Shown one piece after another: positions 43,901 through 62,870 of a stretch of DNA of 64,000 nucleotides. The stretch covers positions 370,510 through 434,509 of IMG/VR virus record IMGVR_UViG_3300032236_001850. One strand, written 5' to 3'. The translations under genes were made by a program, and so were the position numbers. The notes under the pieces are model-generated. The model was not told where the DNA came from and ran no database searches. It saw only the letters and a program-made list of their open reading frames with translations. The number at the start of each line of letters is the position of its first letter. Positions within the stretch are counted from its first letter, which is position 1.

Positions 43901-44568
43901 ATCTATGAAAATATCAAAACAAGACAAACTATTACCTCATTTAGGTTTATTAAACTTTGAGGGTGATGCTGTAAGAGCATACAAAAAACCAGACGGTGAT
44001 CGCTACATCATAGTGGACGAAAGACTTGAAATTATAGCAGAGTGGGATTCTCTTGAGATCTTTGAGTTTATAAGAGGTGATTTTGCAGTAACTACTAGTT
44101 ACGGTAAGGATTACAGATACACAGACTGGAACGACGATTGCAAGCCAAGGAAAGAAGTATTGGATCTTTTCATTGGTATAGTTGATTTACCTGAAGTGGT
44201 TAAGAGATTATCAGCCCTTGCTTCTGGTTTAAGCGAGGAAGATCTTGGTAGACATTCAATAGAAAGCATACAACTAATATCGGAAAAAACCATGCCACCC
44301 GTTCTTTGTGTTAAGTATAAGGACGAGGTAATTGAAAGTTTCAAGGATATTAGTGAGATGGTTAGATTCATGGAGGCTTTGAAAAATGGTTAATGAGAAT
44401 GTAAGAGTTGGATTTAGATCAGATGATCCCAACTTTGATTGGCAATCTGTTATCGGGAAACAACCCGGATATGAGTTTGTAAGATCAAGAACCATAGAAA
44501 ACAACGAGAATCCAAACTGGCCAAAATGGACAATTATTATTGATTATAAAAGAAATAAAATTAAATAA
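40943..44568 (+). CDS. Run of small hypothetical (probably early) genes, several membrane-associated
   Basis: Packed ORFs 40943, 41137, 41892, 42341, 42789, 43244, 43675, 43905, 44386; no recognised motifs. Confidence 0.5.
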
Positions 44569-44569
44569 A

Positions 44570-45001
44570 ATGAGTAAAGTAAAAATTTCAACAGACAAAG
44601 GTGATATGGTTGCAGAACTATATGACAACGAAACACCAATCACAGCAGGCAATTTTTTAAAATTAGCTAATGATGGATTCTATAACGGACTAAATTTCCA
44701 TAGAGTTATCCCTAATTTTGTTATCCAAGGTGGATGTCCAACAGGTACTGGTCAAGGTGGACCTGGTTATAATATCCCTTGTGAGGTAACTGCACCAAAT
44801 CAATTCCACGACAGAGGAGTTCTTTCTATGGCACATGCCGGAAGAAACACAGGAGGATCCCAGTTCTTTATTTGTCACAGCAGACAAAACACAGCTCACT
44901 TGGACGGTAACCACACATGCTTTGGTAAGGTAACTGAGGGTCTAGATGTTATCGACCAGATCCAGCAAGGTGACAAGATAATATCAATTTCTGAAATATA
45001 A
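44570..45001 (+). CDS. Cyclophilin-type peptidyl-prolyl isomerase
   Basis: [29 protein letters not shown]; start ATG 44570. Confidence 0.95.
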
Positions 45002-45767: not shown

Positions 45768-46013
45768 ATGAATAATTCTGATAACAAAATACCAGAACTT
45801 AATCTAAAGATGGAAACTAGGACTATGGAAGCAAAGACTAGAGTACTACGTACTCCTTATGTTTTAGTAACAACTCCTTATATGATACTTTCTGATAAAG
45901 ATGGAACTAGAAGAGTGTGGACAAGAAACAAAAGAAGCATAATTCTGTATTATCTTTATAAAATAACAAGGATTGAATGGTTTATAAAAAAATATAATGA
46001 ACAGGCTAGATAA
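45768..46013 (+). CDS. Small protein carrying a gp23 major-capsid-like segment
   Basis: IPELNLKMETRTMEAKTRVLRTPY resembles the gp23 ExxFxIxKxxxEAKSRxLKAxY segment. Confidence 0.5.
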   Translation: MNNSDNKIPELNLKMETRTMEAKTRVLRTPYVLVTTPYMILSDKDGTRRVWTRNKRSIILYYLYKITRIEWFIKKYNEQAR

Positions 46014-47247
46014 ACAATACACAGATCTACTTGCAACCATATTGGAGCATGGGGTAGATAAAAAAGATAGAACAGGAACCGGCACAAGGTCAATATTTGG
46101 TTATACCATCCGACATAATATGAAAGATGGGTTTCCACTTCTTACAACCAAGAAAATGTCATTCAAAACAATCGTAACAGAACTTATCTGGTTCTTACGA
46201 GGTGATACAAACATTAAGTTTTTGGTTGATAATAATTGTCATATTTGGGATGGTGATGCTTATAAAGCGTTTGGAAAATGGAAACAAGAAACAGACGCTA
46301 AAATAAGAAAAGAAAACCCAACAATAGATTTTCAGCCTTTGGAATATGAATCACAAGAAGAATTTATCAACAAAATAAAAACAGATGATGAGTTTGCTAA
46401 GAAGTGGGGTGAGTTAGGTCCAATTTATGGAGCTCAATGGAGAAGTTGGGGAGAACATTTACCTCAGGATCCTCAATATAAATTAGCAGCTAGAACATAT
46501 ATCGATCAGATCCATAACTCTATAGATTTGCTTATAATTGACCCTGACTCAAGAAGAAACAGAGTTTCAGCATGGAATGTTGGTGAACTGAACATGATGG
46601 TTCTTCCGCCATGTCATACTGATTTTCAATTTTATTCCGTTGAGATGACAAACGAAGAAAGGTGTCAATATTTTGCAAGTAGTCTGAATAAGAATATTTC
46701 ATTTACAAAAAATCTTACCAATAAAAAACTTGATGAACTTGGTTGTCCCTCACGTAGATTGTCACTAATGTGGAATCAGCGTTCGGTAGATACTTTCTTG
46801 GGTTTACCCTTTAATATTGCTTCCTATGGATTATTATTAGAAATAATTGGGAGATGTGTTAATATGATTCCTGACCAGTTGATTGGTAATTTGGGTGATG
46901 TTCATTTGTATTCAAATCACATTCAGCAAGCTAAAGAACAGATTGGAAGAAAATATACACACGAGGAAAGAACCTCCATGTTGATCTCCGCTATGGGTGA
47001 AGAAAAATATAATAAAGCACTTGGTGAACTGATGCCATTTGGTGGAGGTATGAGTGAATATTATGACTCTTATAACATACCTCACAGAACTAGAGAACCC
47101 TTTGATTTACCTAAATTGATTCTAAATCCAATATTTTTAGCGGATCTGGAACATAAAGGATTTGATGCAGCTATAAATGGCGAGATTAATTTCAAAATTG
47201 AAAATTATCAAGCTCATCCACATATACCAGCACCTCTAAGCAACTAA
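45997..47247 (+). CDS. thyA: Thymidylate synthase with insertions
   Basis: DRTGTGT, LPPCH, QRSVD..GLPFN, DVHLYSNH. Confidence 0.95.
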   Translation: MNRLDKQYTDLLATILEHGVDKKDRTGTGTRSIFGYTIRHNMKDGFPLLTTKKMSFKTIVTELIWFLRGDTNIKFLVDNNCHIWDGDAYKAFGKWKQETDAKIRKENPTIDFQPLEYESQEEFINKIKTDDEFAKKWGELGPIYGAQWRSWGEHLPQDPQYKLAARTYIDQIHNSIDLLIIDPDSRRNRVSAWNVGELNMMVLPPCHTDFQFYSVEMTNEERCQYFASSLNKNISFTKNLTNKKLDELGCPSRRLSLMWNQRSVDTFLGLPFNIASYGLLLEIIGRCVNMIPDQLIGNLGDVHLYSNHIQQAKEQIGRKYTHEERTSMLISAMGEEKYNKALGELMPFGGGMSEYYDSYNIPHRTREPFDLPKLILNPIFLADLEHKGFDAAINGEINFKIENYQAHPHIPAPLSN

Positions 47248-48674: not shown

Positions 48675-49088
48675 ATGGAACTAATATCATCACACCCAAT
48701 AAAGAAATCAGATTTAGGATTTCATGGTAATCTATTCGGAGGAAAATTAATGGCCTGGATGGATGCAGGAGCTGCTGTTTATGCAATGGAAGCTTGTGAT
48801 TCACCAAGAATGGTAACTATACTCATAGATAAATGTGTTTTCAAGAAACCTGCCAAGGAAGGACAGATCATTAAGATCTATGGTGAGGTACTAAGTATTG
48901 GTAACACATCAATCACTCTTTATATGGAAGCTAGATCGCATAATGTTTATTCAGGAACACAATCTGTGATTCTGTCAACAAATATGAAATTCGTACGAAT
49001 TGACGAGAATGGTGATCCTATTCCTATCTCCGATAAAGTGAAGGAGAAATACAAGGACAATGGGGAAAAGGAAAAAGAATCCAGATAG
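48675..49088 (+). CDS. Acyl-CoA thioesterase (hotdog fold, YciA-like)
   Basis: HGNLFGGKLMAWMD, FKKP, GNTSI, FVRID. Confidence 0.85.
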   Translation: MELISSHPIKKSDLGFHGNLFGGKLMAWMDAGAAVYAMEACDSPRMVTILIDKCVFKKPAKEGQIIKIYGEVLSIGNTSITLYMEARSHNVYSGTQSVILSTNMKFVRIDENGDPIPISDKVKEKYKDNGEKEKESR

Positions 49089-49404
49089 GGATCTGGATAG
49101 AAAAAAATGGGCTGATGATCTTATGGGTCGCTACGGTCAATTACAGGAAATAATGGACAATACACCAATTTCTGAAATTGAATGGAAACCTGATAATACT
49201 GACATTTTCCTACCAATACAAAGAGTTTTTGCAAAAACTGTTGGTCTAGATCTGGTCGAGGTTGCACCAATGTCTGCACCGACTGGGATGTTATTCTACA
49301 TGGATCCAGCTACAATTCTTACCGACGAGGAACAAATTGAGAGAGATGCAGCCAAATGGATGAGAGAAAATATTGAATGGGTAAAAATAAAATTAGATAA
49401 ATGA
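49060..49404 (+). CDS. Small protein carrying a gp23 Gol-region-like segment
   Basis: LPIQRVFAKTVGLDLVEVAPMSAPTGMLFYMD. Confidence 0.65.
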   Translation: MGKRKKNPDRDLDRKKWADDLMGRYGQLQEIMDNTPISEIEWKPDNTDIFLPIQRVFAKTVGLDLVEVAPMSAPTGMLFYMDPATILTDEEQIERDAAKWMRENIEWVKIKLDK

Positions 49405-49937
49405 AAAAAACACTAGTTATAAATTTCTACGGAGGACCTGGATCAGGTAAAAGCACAACTGCTGCTCGTATATTTTCAGAGCTTAAGGATAAAGGATATA
49501 ATGTCGAACTTGCTACCGAATATGCAAAGGATATGACCTGGCAAAAATCTTTTCATGTTCTTGGAAATCAGGTTTATATATTTGCTAAACAACAACATAG
49601 AATATGGAGACTTGATGGTATGGTTGATATGATAATAACTGATGCGCCTCTATTAAATAGTCTCGTATATGGTGACACTAGTGATACTTTCAAGTCTCTT
49701 GTTATTGAGGAATATTGGAAGAGACCAACTTTCGACGTTTATTTGAATAGGGTAAAGAAATACAATCCTGCAGGAAGATCCCAGCATCTTGAAGAGGCAA
49801 TAGAGATAGATAAAATAACAACCAGAAGAGTCGAGGAGGTTAAAGAGTTTGATCTTATAGTCGATGGTGAGAAGAATTCAACCGAAGAAATAGTAAACGG
49901 CATATTAGAAAAATATAAAGAATTACAAAAATACTAA
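49401..49937 (+). CDS. P-loop kinase (NadR/AAA_28-like)
   Basis: GGPGSGKST, EYAK, ITDAPL, GR. Confidence 0.75.
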   Translation: MKKTLVINFYGGPGSGKSTTAARIFSELKDKGYNVELATEYAKDMTWQKSFHVLGNQVYIFAKQQHRIWRLDGMVDMIITDAPLLNSLVYGDTSDTFKSLVIEEYWKRPTFDVYLNRVKKYNPAGRSQHLEEAIEIDKITTRRVEEVKEFDLIVDGEKNSTEEIVNGILEKYKELQKY

Positions 49938-50581
49938 TAATGATACATTTTTTAAGAAACCCTAAGGGTCAAACACTAATAGAATGCGAAGCAATGGAGG
50001 AAGATCTTAGTGCTTCAATGTATGTTTGGAACTACACAATGGAAGTTCTTTACAGAGCTAAACAATCAACAACTGAGGTTCTTGAATTTGCACGTACCAT
50101 GGACGACCTTGATGAGATAAGAGGCCTATGGTGGGAGAAAGCAAGAGACATGGAGGATTGGCAAAGCATAGATGATTTCGTTGCCCATCATTTCAAAGCT
50201 GCTGCTAAAAAATATGATCTGAATTACGTAACGGATTAAATATGAAAAAGAGATTTGAATGCCAAAGAAAAAATATGCGATGTCTAAATTGGACCGCTAT
50301 TATAACCTGGACTATTATATTTACTATAGCCTATAACCTATTCAAATGGTTATATGGTCTTGTATTTTAATTTCTATTAGGGAATAAAGGATCTGGTTGT
50401 ATATCTGGATCCTTCTTATTCTTTAAATATTCCATGGCGGACATACCGACCTGGTCTATAAAACTTGGCATCTTGAATGGCTCTCTACATTCACCACCAA
50501 CATTAACACTCCCCACCAGACCTGGATTCATAGCTTCCAGTCTTTTAGAGATCATGTCTAAATATTCTTGACTTGGTTTCA

Positions 50582-60107: not shown

Positions 60108-62870
60108 TTATTTTAAATATCCAGTTCTTATTAGATAAAAGTTTGTGCTACCCCCGGTTAATATGCCATCTATGTTCATTACTTGTAAGCCTGGATATGT
60201 AGATTTTAGATTGGCAGTTCCCGAATTTATTTGTGACCATTCAACTGGTGTGAATATTCTATATGTTGGTGTTGAATTTGTCCATCCCGTAGATCCTCCG
60301 CTCTTAAAGTAAATTAAGAATATATCTGTTACTGATAAATTGTTATCGTTATTAACATCCATTCTGTAGAAATCCTTAGAATTGAATATTCTATTTAGAA
60401 CTTTTGTATTGAAGCTATATGCATCATTTATGGTTGGTGCAGAGATCGGAATGTTTTCTAATGCAATTCTGAAATCATTCGAAACTGATGACAATGTGGT
60501 TGTTATAAGATACTTCCCCGTTGAATCTGTCGGATATATTCCGTATAAGGTGTAAATTATCTGGCTTTTTACTCTGTAATATAATTTAACTGGAATTGCA
60601 TTTATGCCAGTATTTTCTGAATCGTAAACGTATCCATTATATGTGAATGGTGTGCTTACTAGGCCAGATTGGGAATAAGTGGTACATGAACCATTTGTTA
60701 CAACAGCTCTAAATAAAACACCATCTGTCTGATTAGTAAAAGTATATGAAGTTGTTGTGTTTGAAATATCCGTCCAGGTTACACCACTATCAGTGGATCT
60801 TTGCCATTTGGATACTGTTCCCGTATTTCCACTTAGATTTATAGTTCCTGATGTACCTGCATAAGAAGAAACAGAGCCTCCCGTTGGTGGTGCAAGTACA
60901 GAAACACTTACAACATTTGGATAAGTTACTACAGTACAACCTGTTGCTTGTATTTCAACTCTATAGTAATAAGTACCTGGTGCTGTAATTACTCCATTAG
61001 TCCAGTTTGATGTTGTTCCAGTAAGTGCAAAGTTATATAAAGTACCTGTGTTATTATTACCGCTTGTATCAGTTAAAGAAGTAATAGTATTTGTGCCGTT
61101 TGGATTTCCTTGATTAAATCTATAATATTCTACAAGTGAACTTGATGTACCTATCTCGGAATTCATATTTGATTGAATATCAGATTGTGAACGTACAACA
61201 TTCCAAATTCTTAACTCGTCTATTGTTCCATTAAAATATTGAATACCTGTTTGTATTGATCCTATACGTATTGAGGGTGGTGCACTTCTAAGACCTGTGG
61301 CACCGGTTGTACTGGCTTCTAATACACCATTAATATAAAGTTTCATGGCACCAGTTGAACCATCCCAAGTAGCCGCAACGTGTACCCAATTTCCAGTATT
61401 AATACTTGTAGTTGATTGAATGGTAACATCAGGAAGTCCAACACCAAATGCTAACTTACTATTAAGTAATGATGTACCAAAATCTGTTGTAGCACCACCA
61501 ACTTCAGCATCAACTATACCATTACCCTGATACCATTGTGATCCTGAAGGTGATGCTTGTGTTGTTTTAACCCAATACTCTATTGTAAAGGCATTAAGAC
61601 TAGGTTTAGGTATATTTACATAATCATTAGAACCATCTGTATTTAAAGCACCGCCATAAATAGTTTCACTTAAACTTGTGGTTGTATTTGCTATATCAGT
61701 CCAATTTACATTATCAGTTGATCTTTGCCATTTATTTATATTTCCGCTTTGTCCTGAAAGTGTTAATTGTACATTACCACCCGTACAAATTGTTCCTGTA
61801 GTTGTTGCCAGGGTTCCACCAATTGGAACTGTTCCTGTTTTTGTAACGACGACAGTACCATAAGCACCAACATTAGGTTCTTCTGCTCTAATAGTATTTG
61901 AAGCTAATGTTCCTGCGTTAGATGTGAAAACAACAGTTCCTATACCCGAAGCATTTGTTGTTAAGGTATAAGCTGATAAAGTTCCACCACCAACATCAGA
62001 AGACATAACTAAGTTAGTAGGCATTCCAACACCATTAACATCTTTTGTTGTAACGGTTATAGTTGATGTTAGAGCAGTACAAGAAATTGAATTAGATGAT
62101 GTTAAAACAATAGAAGCTACACCTTGTGAATAACTTCCGGTACTTGATAAAGGTGTTGAATTAGGTGCCACTAAAGCACTATAAACATCATGTTCTTCTG
62201 TTGCACCACCTGTTGCGGCAGTATATCCAAAATAGAAATCAGAAATTCCTACAAAATTTGTAGCTAGGTTAATTGAAACGGATAACGTAGCTGCAGTAGG
62301 ACGAGTAGTTGTATTTGATATACGTACTTCCAATATGTGAGTTACTCCGTTATACTCTATCCAATTATATTTCATTGCACCATCTGCTAAGTTAACTGGA
62401 GAAGCAACCACGTTTGTACTACCGGAGTGTAATACCCCATTTATGTCGAGTGCTATATGATTATTACCACCAACTTCACCATTGTCATAAGTATCATACT
62501 CAACTGCAATAGACTTTCCCGGCATTCCTTGATACCCTAGACCACCACCAGAACTACCTGCATTATTACTAGCTTGTTGAATACAGAATGTCATACCATC
62601 CGCTCTTGAACCAGGTATCATTTTTGATGTGAAATATGTGGAGAATGACATATCATCAGGAAGAGAAATTTTCTGTTTCCAGAAAGCTGATCCTGCTTGA
62701 TTACCAGCATTAGGGGTTAATCTTAAATATGAACTACTAATAATGGAAGCATTACCGTTAATTTGCCATCCACCAGCCGAACTAAAGTTTGGTGAATAGA
62801 TAGGAAGTGGAGTTTGTGCATTAATTAGTGTGCTTGTTATTATGCACAGGAATAATAATATTTTTCTCAT
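60108..62870 (-). CDS. Secreted multidomain adhesin: L-type lectin, LamG/ConA, Ig-like repeats, dockerin-like EF hand
   Basis: ADGMTF/AVEYDT lectin motifs; WVHVAAT, GTIDELRIWN; KWQRSTD repeat twice; DVNNDNNLSVTD. Confidence 0.75.
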   Translation of the reverse strand: MRKILLFLCIITSTLINAQTPLPIYSPNFSSAGGWQINGNASIISSSYLRLTPNAGNQAGSAFWKQKISLPDDMSFSTYFTSKMIPGSRADGMTFCIQQASNNAGSSGGGLGYQGMPGKSIAVEYDTYDNGEVGGNNHIALDINGVLHSGSTNVVASPVNLADGAMKYNWIEYNGVTHILEVRISNTTTRPTAATLSVSINLATNFVGISDFYFGYTAATGGATEEHDVYSALVAPNSTPLSSTGSYSQGVASIVLTSSNSISCTALTSTITVTTKDVNGVGMPTNLVMSSDVGGGTLSAYTLTTNASGIGTVVFTSNAGTLASNTIRAEEPNVGAYGTVVVTKTGTVPIGGTLATTTGTICTGGNVQLTLSGQSGNINKWQRSTDNVNWTDIANTTTSLSETIYGGALNTDGSNDYVNIPKPSLNAFTIEYWVKTTQASPSGSQWYQGNGIVDAEVGGATTDFGTSLLNSKLAFGVGLPDVTIQSTTSINTGNWVHVAATWDGSTGAMKLYINGVLEASTTGATGLRSAPPSIRIGSIQTGIQYFNGTIDELRIWNVVRSQSDIQSNMNSEIGTSSSLVEYYRFNQGNPNGTNTITSLTDTSGNNNTGTLYNFALTGTTSNWTNGVITAPGTYYYRVEIQATGCTVVTYPNVVSVSVLAPPTGGSVSSYAGTSGTINLSGNTGTVSKWQRSTDSGVTWTDISNTTTSYTFTNQTDGVLFRAVVTNGSCTTYSQSGLVSTPFTYNGYVYDSENTGINAIPVKLYYRVKSQIIYTLYGIYPTDSTGKYLITTTLSSVSNDFRIALENIPISAPTINDAYSFNTKVLNRIFNSKDFYRMDVNNDNNLSVTDIFLIYFKSGGSTGWTNSTPTYRIFTPVEWSQINSGTANLKSTYPGLQVMNIDGILTGGSTNFYLIRTGYLK

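What the first reader, a model, noticed from the sequence alone, without database searches (positions are those of the whole stretch)
49060..49404. Stand-alone mini-protein carrying the Gol region of a T4-type major capsid protein
Seen: LPIQRVFAKTVGLDLVEVAPMSAPTGMLFYMD (about 49210-49305) inside a 114-aa ORF in a non-structural operon. It aligns with gp23 MVRRAIPNLIAFDICGVQPMNSPTG (recalled). Known: that segment is the Gol peptide, which binds EF-Tu and triggers Lit, and capsid proteins trigger other defences such as CapRel. Inference: a capsid-epitope decoy that blocks a capsid-sensing defence, an EF-Tu modulator, or an assembly regulator.
Basis: partly seen in the sequence, partly recalled or inferred. 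Interest (0 to 1): 0.8.

Follow-up and report, generated by a model that had tools for sequence, protein, structure and literature searches.

The report
Free-standing capsid N-arm (Gol) mini-protein
A 114-residue gene in a 434-kb phage, sitting among nucleotide-metabolism genes, carries a selectively maintained copy of the most conserved stretch of the phage's own T4-type capsid protein (the 'Gol' stretch); it belongs to a scattered, apparently undescribed family of such capsid-N-terminus mini-proteins, and its function is untested.

Summary
ORF 49060-49404 (+) encodes 114 aa. Residues 47-84 are homologous to residues 95-133 of this phage's own 574-aa Gp23-type capsid protein (BLASTP 56% identity, E=8e-10; hhalign 97.5%, E=5.6e-12) and to T4 gp23 99-127, the Gol region.

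It is not a decaying fragment. The frame is intact in every relative with DNA in hand, the gene is translationally coupled in a thyA-DHFR-thioesterase-kinase operon, and dN/dS on the motif is 0.09-0.29.

New here: profile searches found over 100 small viral proteins with the same motif. Nine were checked and are complete genes in non-structural regions of large phage contigs. The distant ones copy the whole capsid N-terminal region (hhalign 99.5%, E=3.7e-23, capsid residues 7-136).

Function is unresolved. My preferred reading (about 0.35) is a trans-acting mimic of the nascent capsid N-terminus that engages the host partners known for T4 gp23 (EF-Tu, GroEL). A role in prohead assembly or targeting (about 0.3) and a decoy for a defence sensor (about 0.13) remain open. 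The one complex prediction (E. coli EF-Tu) gave no answer.

Novelty: a new variant of a known kind. Interest: moderate to high.

The parts
49060..49404 (+). 114-aa ORF: free-standing paralogue of the capsid N-terminal region
   Evidence: ORF listing and sequence. 14 homologues at 49-91% identity. Intact frame in 8 DNA copies.
49041..49046 (+). Shine-Dalgarno-like AAGGAG, 13 nt before the ATG, inside the 3' end of the thioesterase gene
   Evidence: Read directly from the sequence. The 29-nt overlap with the upstream ORF is kept in relatives.
49099..49161 (+). Predicted N-terminal helix (residues 14-34) in the fast-evolving N-terminal half, preceded by a basic tip (residues 1-18, pI 10.6)
   Evidence: AF2 monomer model, low confidence. 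dN/dS 0.42-0.77. This half is absent from the 76-aa variant in L007. Charge computed.
49198..49311 (+). Capsid N-arm / first hairpin ('Gol') motif, residues 47-84. Core residues P52, L65, V66, V68, P70, M71, S72, P74, G76, L78, Y80.
   Evidence: BLASTP against own capsid protein, hhalign, Pfam Gp23, T4 gp23 99-127. dN/dS 0.09-0.29. P70 and P74 are invariant in 128 sequences.
49324..49398 (+). Predicted C-terminal amphipathic helix, residues 89-113, conserved in the close family and partly in distant mini-proteins
   Evidence: AF2 secondary structure. Invariant E91, Q92, I93, W100, R102, N104. hhalign of A1 against A4 extends to residue 99.
48675..49088 (+). Context: upstream 4HBT thioesterase gene, overlapping the mini gene by 29 nt
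   Evidence: Pfam 4HBT, E=7e-17.
49401..49937 (+). Context: downstream P-loop (AAA_28 / thymidylate-kinase-like) gene; its ATG overlaps the mini stop codon (ATGA)
   Evidence: Pfam and PHROG hits; sequence.
49940..50239 (+). Context: 99-aa protein of unknown function that follows the mini gene in every relative (84-98% identity, dN/dS 0.01-0.12)
   Evidence: Synteny; rates.
50387..50414 (+). Terminator-like hairpin that probably ends the operon
   Evidence: Consensus scan only.

Best explanation
What it is (about 0.95 confidence): a free-standing, expressed paralogue of the N-terminal region of a T4-type (Gp23) major capsid protein. It has been reduced to the N-arm and first hairpin (the 'Gol' stretch), flanked by a variable N-terminal helix and a conserved C-terminal helix. 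It lies in a nucleotide-metabolism operon about 120 kb from the head genes. How it most likely works (inferred, about 0.35): the motif is not part of a capsid fold here. It is displayed as an exposed linear element and acts in trans as a mimic of the nascent capsid N-terminus. It would occupy the cellular partner that this stretch contacts before it is locked into the shell. For T4 gp23 the published partners are EF-Tu (domains II-III, GDP form) and GroEL. Binding could tune translation or chaperonin capacity ahead of the burst of capsid synthesis, or mask that interface. Shown here: homology, selection, gene context, family spread. Inferred: any binding partner and any effect.
For: The motif is the only part shared with the capsid protein, and it is the most constrained part of the gene. 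dN/dS is 0.09-0.29 for the motif, 0.42-0.77 for the N-terminal half, and 0.25-0.52 for the whole gene. The same positions (P70, P74, G76, L65, V66, V68) are kept across 128 small proteins that lack the rest of the HK97 fold and have unrelated flanks, including basic helices, a zinc-ribbon-like tail and DUF4116 repeats. This argues for a portable module with a conserved external partner. The AF2 monomer model has helices at 14-34 and 89-113, with the motif as extended coil carrying the best local pLDDT (72-80) and pTM 0.18, so it is not an autonomous globular fold. The gene context is non-structural in every independent lineage checked: thyA/DHFR/kinase here; dUTPase/PolB in L013; TK/IMPDH/Macro in L045; small accessory ORFs in L014, L023 and L044. 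From the literature: the 29-residue Gol peptide binds EF-Tu domains II-III, the first ~100 residues bind more stably, and Gol is the most conserved part of gp23 (PMC3014915). The gp23 N-terminus directs fusion proteins to GroEL (PMC3012670). Distant family members copy exactly that first ~100-130 residues (hhalign 99.5%, capsid residues 7-136). The phage has no Cpn10, Cpn60 or EF-Tu of its own.
Against: There is no direct evidence of any binding. The EF-Tu complex prediction scored 0.00 and the tool says it must not be read either way. EF-Tu and GroEL binding is documented only for T4 in E. coli. The mini motif is only 31% identical to T4's, and the host here is unknown, probably Bacteroidota judging from capsid relatives. 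In the capsid the same stretch is also a structural element, so its conservation need not reflect a host partner. In T4 proheads the capsid N-terminus faces the scaffold (PMC9546572), which favours the assembly rival. Expression timing is not known: no RNA runs were listed and promoter scans were uninformative.
Confidence: 0.35

Rival explanations
1. Prohead assembly factor or capsid-targeted protein. The capsid-derived N-terminal region docks on the scaffold core, or on capsid subunits, as the real capsid N-terminus does. The mini-protein would then regulate nucleation or size, or be carried into the head.
For: Distant members, such as the 157-aa gene in LR745206 and L066, copy the capsid propeptide-like N-terminus almost residue for residue and end in basic tails. 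In T4 this region lies inside the prohead and probably contacts the scaffold (PMC9546572; PMC9958956). The phage has a T4-type protease-scaffold-capsid module. A short N-terminal capsid-targeting sequence is a known T4 device.
Against: In this family the propeptide-like half is the least constrained part and is missing in one lineage. hhalign finds no capsid similarity outside residues 47-84. The gene is never next to head genes. There is no similarity to T4 core proteins gp67, gp68 or gp22. An (L/I)-x-E protease site is not consistently kept.
Confidence: 0.3
2. Anti-defence decoy. An early-made fragment occupies a host sensor that recognises newly made capsid protein (Avs7/8/10, CapRel, CmdTAC or Lit-type systems) without activating it.
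For: Many defences sense capsid protein monomers. The mini gene evolves 3-30 times faster than its neighbours, which are 92-99% identical where the mini is 47-67% identical. The setting looks like an accessory-gene region.
Against: For Lit the Gol peptide alone is the activator, and for titration-type sensors a mimic should trigger rather than block. There is no sign of positive selection, since all dN/dS values are below 1. No defence system is known for this host.
Confidence: 0.13
3. One piece of a multi-part capsid mimic. The mini-protein would pair with other capsid-derived fragments of the same genome: the 297-aa paralogue that lacks the N-arm, and/or the 81-aa ORF at 45768-46013 that carries a segment like the E-loop return strand.
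For: The genome holds three Pfam Gp23 matches. The 297-aa paralogue is conserved alongside the mini gene in relatives G001 and G002. The 81-aa ORF resembles the paralogue's E-loop strand (E=4e-4; Pfam E=0.0044 for the G001 copy).
Against: The 297-aa protein keeps its own copy of the strand that the mini would supply, and BLASTP finds no mini-to-paralogue match. The 81-aa ORF is missing from three relatives that have the mini gene. All the similarities are weak.
Confidence: 0.05
4. Functionless remnant of a partial capsid-gene duplication, or an artefact of gene calling.
For: It is short, homology covers only 38 residues, and it evolves faster than its neighbours.
Against: The frame is intact and the length conserved in all relatives. 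dN/dS on the motif is 0.09-0.29. The gene is translationally coupled. The capsid copy of the motif is invariant in 20 clade members, yet the mini copy is only 56% identical to it, so the split is old and the gene has been kept since.
Confidence: 0.05

Closest known systems
Gol region of T4 major capsid protein gp23 (residues ~93-122)
   Same: It is the homologous stretch, with the shared core D..V.PM..PTG..F. It aligns to gp23 99-127, and through the family profile to 94-135.
   Different: Here it is a separate 114-aa gene product without the capsid fold, encoded outside the head module. Identity to T4 is only 31%. Binding to EF-Tu and activation of Lit are untested.
Pfam PF07068 (Gp23) capsid proteins, including this phage's own 574-aa capsid protein and T4 gp24
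   Same: Shares profile positions 12-49 of the family model; 56% identity to its own capsid protein over 34 residues.
   Different: It covers about 10% of the model, scores below the gathering cut-off, and lacks the A, P and insertion domains, so it cannot form a shell subunit. gp24-type paralogues are full-length.
Other stand-alone capsid-N-terminus mini-proteins found here (e.g. the 157-aa ORF of huge phage LR745206.1, L066, P0124, P0061, P0144)
   Same: Same motif followed by a helical, often basic tail, and the same kind of non-structural context. hhalign of A1 against A4 gives 99.2%, E=1e-19.
   Different: Those keep a recognisable copy of the capsid propeptide-like N-terminus (hhalign to capsid residues 7-136). 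The window's family has lost detectable similarity there and has its own conserved C-terminal helix.
T4 capsid-targeting sequence (CTS) of internal proteins IPII/IPIII
   Same: A possible functional analogy only: a short portable sequence that could direct a small protein to the prohead core (PMC9958956).
   Different: The CTS is about 10 residues, N-terminal, cleaved by gp21 and unrelated in sequence to gp23. No evidence here of packaging or cleavage.

Membership tests
Pfam PF07068 Gp23 (T4-type major capsid protein) | Whole-protein score at or above the curated cut-off (24.4 bits) | tested here: not met
   18.8 bits, E=1.2e-3; 18.2 bits in the genome scan. Homology of the segment is nevertheless supported by hhalign at 97.5%.
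Pfam PF07068 Gp23 (T4-type major capsid protein) | Complete HK97-type fold (A and P domains, about 376 profile positions) | tested here: not met
   Only profile positions 12-49 are matched and the protein is 114 aa. The AF2 model shows two helices and a coil.
Pfam PF07068 Gp23 (T4-type major capsid protein) | Encoded in the head module next to the protease and scaffold | tested here: not met
   The gene lies in a thyA-DHFR-thioesterase-kinase operon. The head module is about 120 kb away.
Gol peptide (functional definition from T4) | Sequence equivalence to gp23 residues ~93-122 | tested here: met
   Mini 53-81 aligns to T4 gp23 99-127. The family profile aligns to gp23 94-135 in PDB 6uzc.
Gol peptide (functional definition from T4) | Binds EF-Tu domains II-III | tested here: inconclusive
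   The complex prediction with E. coli EF-Tu scored 0.00 and the tool's verdict was 'no answer'. A binding assay is needed.
Gol peptide (functional definition from T4) | Activates Lit protease to cleave EF-Tu | not testable with these tools
   No Lit homologue in the phage genome, but that search's control rang nowhere, so it is uninformative. The host is unknown.
Stand-alone capsid-N-terminus mini-proteins (family defined here, alignment A4) | N-arm/hairpin motif followed by a short helical tail, in a complete ORF under ~200 aa outside the head module | tested here: met
   hhalign of A1 against A4 gives 99.2%, E=1e-19, over residues 47-99. The A4 profile finds the mini gene in the genome at E=5.3e-18.
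Stand-alone capsid-N-terminus mini-proteins (family defined here, alignment A4) | Recognisable copy of the capsid propeptide-like N-terminus (KW..I...W..Y..H) | tested here: not met
   hhalign against the capsid N-terminal alignment covers only residues 47-84. Only a faint 'KKW..L' resemblance remains. tblastn to the RM378 capsid gene spans residues 11-82 at E=1e-4.
T4 prohead core proteins gp67 / gp68 / gp22 | Sequence similarity | tested here: not met
   HMMs built from A1, A2 and A4 score about 0 bits against all three.
Co-chaperonin (Cpn10 / gp31-like) | Cpn10 family match or beta-barrel fold | tested here: not met
   No Cpn10 hit for the protein or anywhere in the genome. The predicted structure is helical plus coil.

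The most novel reading that the evidence does not exclude
The Gol stretch is an autonomous, transferable module that binds a universal host factor (EF-Tu and/or the chaperonin). Large phages deploy it as free-standing proteins from non-structural operons. This would explain why it is the most conserved part of T4-type capsid proteins, and would give phages a direct handle on host translation or folding capacity, or on defences that read the capsid-EF-Tu interface.
Probability: 0.25. Interest if true: 0.8.

Novelty: new variant of a known kind. Interest (0 to 1): 0.6.

Why it matters
It has been an open question for over 20 years why the Gol stretch is the most conserved part of T4-type capsid proteins, and whether its binding to EF-Tu and its targeting to GroEL serve the phage. 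A naturally isolated copy of that stretch, kept under purifying selection without the rest of the capsid fold, gives a clean test object. If the stretch has a function of its own, the mini-protein should show it in simple binding and co-expression assays. It also matters for phage defence. Several systems (Lit, Avs7, CapRel, CmdTAC) read newly made capsid protein, and a phage-encoded copy of the sensed region could trigger, blunt or reshape that sensing. Finally, it flags a recurrent class of small viral proteins that are so far un-annotated, or are labelled only as 'Gp23 domain' fragments.

Tried and rejected
**Tests that gave no usable result**
- The complex prediction of the mini-protein with E. 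coli EF-Tu scored 0.00 with the verdict 'no answer', so it is not used either way.
- The AF2 monomer of the mini-protein had pLDDT 63.6 and pTM 0.18, too poor for fold search. Structural neighbours from the ESM Atlas were ignored for the same reason.
- The AF2 model of the phage's own capsid protein, built from a shallow 20-row alignment, had pLDDT 42.6. It could not be used to place the motif in the fold.
- Expression data: no RNA runs were listed. The T4 late-promoter word TATAAATA is not enriched in the window (14 found against 11 expected). Sigma-70-like sites are below the shuffle mean.

**Ideas tested and rejected**
- Pseudogene or neutral fragment: rejected by the dN/dS values and frame conservation.
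- Recent duplicate of the phage's own capsid gene: rejected. The capsid motif is invariant across the clade while the mini copy is only 56% identical to it.
- Contig-end fragments or exon 1 of an intron-split capsid gene as the source of the small hits: rejected for the nine checked loci, which are complete ORFs with other genes downstream. Not excluded for the remaining unchecked hits.
- Relation to T4 core proteins gp67, gp68 and gp22: none found.
- Phage-encoded Cpn10, Cpn60 or EF-Tu: none found. The Lit search found nothing either, but its control rang nowhere, so it is uninformative.
- The 297-aa paralogue that lacks the N-arm as a complement of the mini-protein: the two overlap rather than complement each other.
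- A compositional island: GC content is 0.34-0.38 throughout.

**Left unproven**
- The N-terminus of a 191-aa ORF as a third copy of the motif: hhalign gives only 41%.

Full report
**Setting**

The window is G000:C1:370510-434509 of a 434,509-bp virus record with direct terminal repeats. Its capsid protein is of the T4/Gp23 type. The nearest capsid proteins in the phage collection belong to huge uncultured phages (LR756500, 45%), Lak megaphages (44%), and Tenacibaculum, Chryseobacterium and Flavobacterium phages. This points to a lineage of very large phages, probably of Bacteroidota. The head module lies near 296-300 kb of the genome. It comprises a Peptidase_S77 protease in a long frame with a repeat-rich scaffold, followed by a 574-aa capsid protein.

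**The observation**

- ORF 49060-49404 (+) encodes 114 aa.
- Its start lies 29 nt inside the 3' end of a 4HBT thioesterase gene, with AAGGAG 13 nt upstream.
- Its stop overlaps the start of a P-loop kinase-like gene (ATGA).
- The surrounding operon carries a cyclophilin, thymidylate synthase, DHFR, the thioesterase, the kinase-like gene and a conserved 99-aa ORF. It probably ends at a hairpin at 50387-50414.

Evidence that it is capsid-derived:

| Comparison | Result |
|---|---|
| Pfam Gp23, profile 12-45 | E=1.2e-3, 18.8 bits (below the 24.4-bit cut-off) |
| Own capsid protein, residues 98-131 | 19/34 identical, E=8e-10 |
| hhalign, mini family vs capsid N-terminal alignment | 97.5%, E=5.6e-12, mini 47-84 vs capsid 95-133 |
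| Own capsid 96-131 vs T4 gp23 | aligns to gp23 93-128 |
| Mini vs T4 gp23 (NC_000866) | mini 53-81 vs gp23 99-127, E=2e-4 pairwise |
| Profile of 128 motif-bearing proteins vs PDB | T4 gp23 chains, residues 94-135, E=1.1e-4 |

Homology covers about 38 residues only.

**A kept gene, not a relic**

- Fourteen proteins of 49-91% identity exist in public data, nearly all 104-121 aa.
- Synteny is constant: (thyA)-DHFR-(three small genes including the thioesterase)-mini-(kinase)-99-aa ORF.
- In the eight copies for which I had DNA, the frame is intact.

| Region or gene | dN/dS vs the window copy |
|---|---|
| Mini, whole gene | 0.25-0.52 |
| Mini, motif (residues 50-82) | 0.09-0.29 |
| Mini, N-terminal half | 0.42-0.77 |
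| Mini, C-terminal part | 0.32-0.89 |
| Six neighbouring genes | 0.007-0.195 |

- One lineage (L007) has lost the N-terminal half altogether and keeps a 76-aa protein made of the motif plus the C-terminal helix.
- The neighbours are 92-99% identical in genomes where the mini-protein is only 47-67% identical. It is the fast-evolving gene of a conserved block, yet its motif is held.
- The capsid copy of the motif is invariant in 20 clade members that differ by 10-21% overall. The mini copy is only 56% identical to it. The split is therefore old, or the copy came from another lineage.
- GC content shows no island.

**A wider family**

A profile of the close family searched against 1.84 billion representatives gave 137 hits at E<=1e-3.

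- Median length is 134 aa, and 121 of the hits are 200 aa or shorter. The only hit of 400 aa or more is a TPR false positive.
- Of 128 aligned proteins, 111 hit Pfam Gp23 at E<0.01.
- 96 of the 100 nearest ESM Atlas clusters are viral 'Gp23-domain' clusters, and the top three listed representatives are 117-185 aa.

Some of these hits may be contig-end fragments of capsid genes. The loci I checked, however, are complete ORFs with other genes downstream:

- L011, L012 and L015.
- L013, between dUTPase and PolB.
- L014, two tandem copies.
- L044, with the motif at the N-terminus of a 175-aa protein, seen in 48 blocks of the collection.
- L045, two motif copies, among Macro, TK, IMPDH and GlnA genes.
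- L066.
- A 157-aa ORF in the 634,780-bp phage LR745206.1, which also has a normal 560-aa capsid gene behind a scaffold with the same 13-residue repeats as in this phage.

The distant mini-proteins copy the whole capsid N-terminal region. hhalign against the capsid N-terminal alignment gives 99.5%, E=3.7e-23, spanning capsid residues 7-136 minus the Gly/Ala-rich linker. The window's family joins them at 99.2%, E=1e-19, over residues 47-99.

They are a minority feature:

- In an IMG/VR scan, 74 of the 80 best loci were full-length capsid genes and one was a complete mini gene.
- tblastn against 50,697 phage records hit capsid genes wherever the listed records were annotated. The one record with a second hit place, LR745206.1, was examined and that second place is the 157-aa mini.
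- PHROGs has no family for them, and my literature searches found no description.

**What the stretch does in the parent protein (literature)**

- In T4, the first 65 residues of gp23 are cleaved off. Residues 66-90 form the N-fist, and an extended N-arm follows.
- In the unexpanded prohead the first ordered residue is L106. The preceding part lies inside the prohead and probably contacts the scaffold (PMC9546572; PMC9958956).
- The 29-residue Gol peptide binds EF-Tu domains II-III, prefers the GDP form and inhibits the GTPase.
- The first ~100 residues bind more stably, and Gol is noted as the most conserved part of gp23 (PMC3014915).
- The gp23 N-terminus also drives fusion proteins to GroEL (PMC3012670).

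**Mechanism**

Alone, the mini-protein is predicted as two helices (14-34 and 89-113) joined by an extended segment that carries the motif. The fold confidence is poor (pTM 0.18) but the local pLDDT is highest on the motif.

The same prolines and glycine are kept in over 100 proteins that lack the capsid fold and have unrelated flanks. Combined with the extended prediction, this is most simply explained by an external partner shared with the capsid N-terminus.

I favour a host partner (EF-Tu or the chaperonin) at about 0.35, for three reasons:
- The gene always sits in non-structural, often nucleotide-metabolism, operons.
- In this family only the motif and the C-terminal helix are indispensable.
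- The region copied in the distant members coincides with the T4 fragment that binds EF-Tu and GroEL.

The main rival, at about 0.3, is docking on the scaffold or on capsid subunits during prohead assembly. The faithful propeptide copies and basic tails of the distant members favour this reading.

A defence-sensor decoy is possible (about 0.13) but is awkward for Lit-type and titration-type sensors, because a mimic should trigger them.

I could not discriminate further:
- The EF-Tu complex job gave no answer.
- The capsid model failed.
- No RNA data were listed.
- The phage encodes no EF-Tu, Cpn10 or Cpn60 of its own; the Lit search was uninformative because its control rang nowhere.

**Comparison and verdict**

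The protein is homologous to part of Gp23 but is not a member in the functional sense. It scores below the cut-off, covers about 10% of the model, has no shell fold and lies outside the head module. It carries the sequence equivalent of Gol, but the defining activities (EF-Tu binding, Lit activation) are untested. It is unrelated to T4 core proteins and to co-chaperonins.

I class it as a new variant of a known kind: a free-standing, selected copy of the capsid N-arm/Gol module that belongs to a scattered and apparently undescribed family. Interest is 0.6, because it turns an old question (does Gol have a function of its own?) into a simple experiment.

Noticed in passing
G000:C1 ~87289-88182 (L002:1423-2316), outside the window: A 297-aa Gp23-family ORF (Pfam E=4.7e-11, profile 121-366) that lacks the N-arm and the insertion domain. 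It sits among non-structural genes and is conserved in relatives G001 (301 aa) and G002 (298 aa). It could be a minimal vertex protein or another capsid-derived accessory protein.
   Followed up: partly
window 45768-46013 (+): An 81-aa ORF just upstream of thyA. Its residues 4-29 resemble the E-loop return strand of the 297-aa paralogue (BLASTP E=4e-4). The G001 orthologue hits Pfam Gp23 positions 127-154 at E=0.0044. The ORF is absent from three relatives that have the mini gene. It may be a second capsid-fragment gene in the same operon, but the evidence is weak.
   Followed up: partly
G000:C1 ~76205-76780 (L041:1489-2064), outside the window: A 191-aa ORF whose N-terminus looks like a degenerate N-arm motif (FP..RN...RT.A..LE.V.P). 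Invariant F20, P21, N25, E36 and P40 are kept in 17 homologues. hhalign to the mini family gives only 41% (E=2.8e-4), so this is unproven.
   Followed up: partly
window 45997-47247 (+): The thymidylate synthase is 416 aa, against about 270 aa typically, with an internal insertion and a C-terminal extension. In relative L009 the gene is split by a GIY-YIG homing endonuclease, and in L004 an I-TevI-like gene lies beside it. This looks like a hotspot of mobile-element activity.
   Followed up: no
window 44540-45001 (+): A cyclophilin-type peptidyl-prolyl isomerase (Pfam E=1.2e-45), conserved a few kb upstream of the mini gene in all relatives examined. A phage-encoded folding catalyst near a proline-rich capsid-derived motif may or may not be a coincidence.
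   Followed up: no
L001:8-1198 (own phage) and L024:31-2154 (LR745206.1): Scaffold proteins made of many tandem 13-residue repeats of the type ..YSEYLAENLDK.I. In both phages these are in frame with, or fused to, a T4 gp21-like protease. The repeats could be docking sites for capsid N-termini.
   Followed up: no
window 60108-62870 (-): A 919-aa protein with legume-lectin and LamG/concanavalin-like domains (E=3e-29 and 9e-28), probably a carbohydrate-binding fibre or adhesin.
   Followed up: no
window 49940-50239 (+): A 99-aa ORF of unknown function that always follows the mini gene (or the kinase gene). It is extremely conserved (84-98% identity, dN/dS 0.01-0.12) and has no family match in Pfam, PHROGs or NCBIfam.
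   Followed up: partly
LR745206.1 (W01) 255082-255243, 222134-222304 and 440206-440298: Further weak Pfam Gp23 partial matches (E=2e-4 to 2e-3) scattered in this 635-kb phage, hinting that capsid-gene fragments may be common in very large phage genomes.
   Followed up: no
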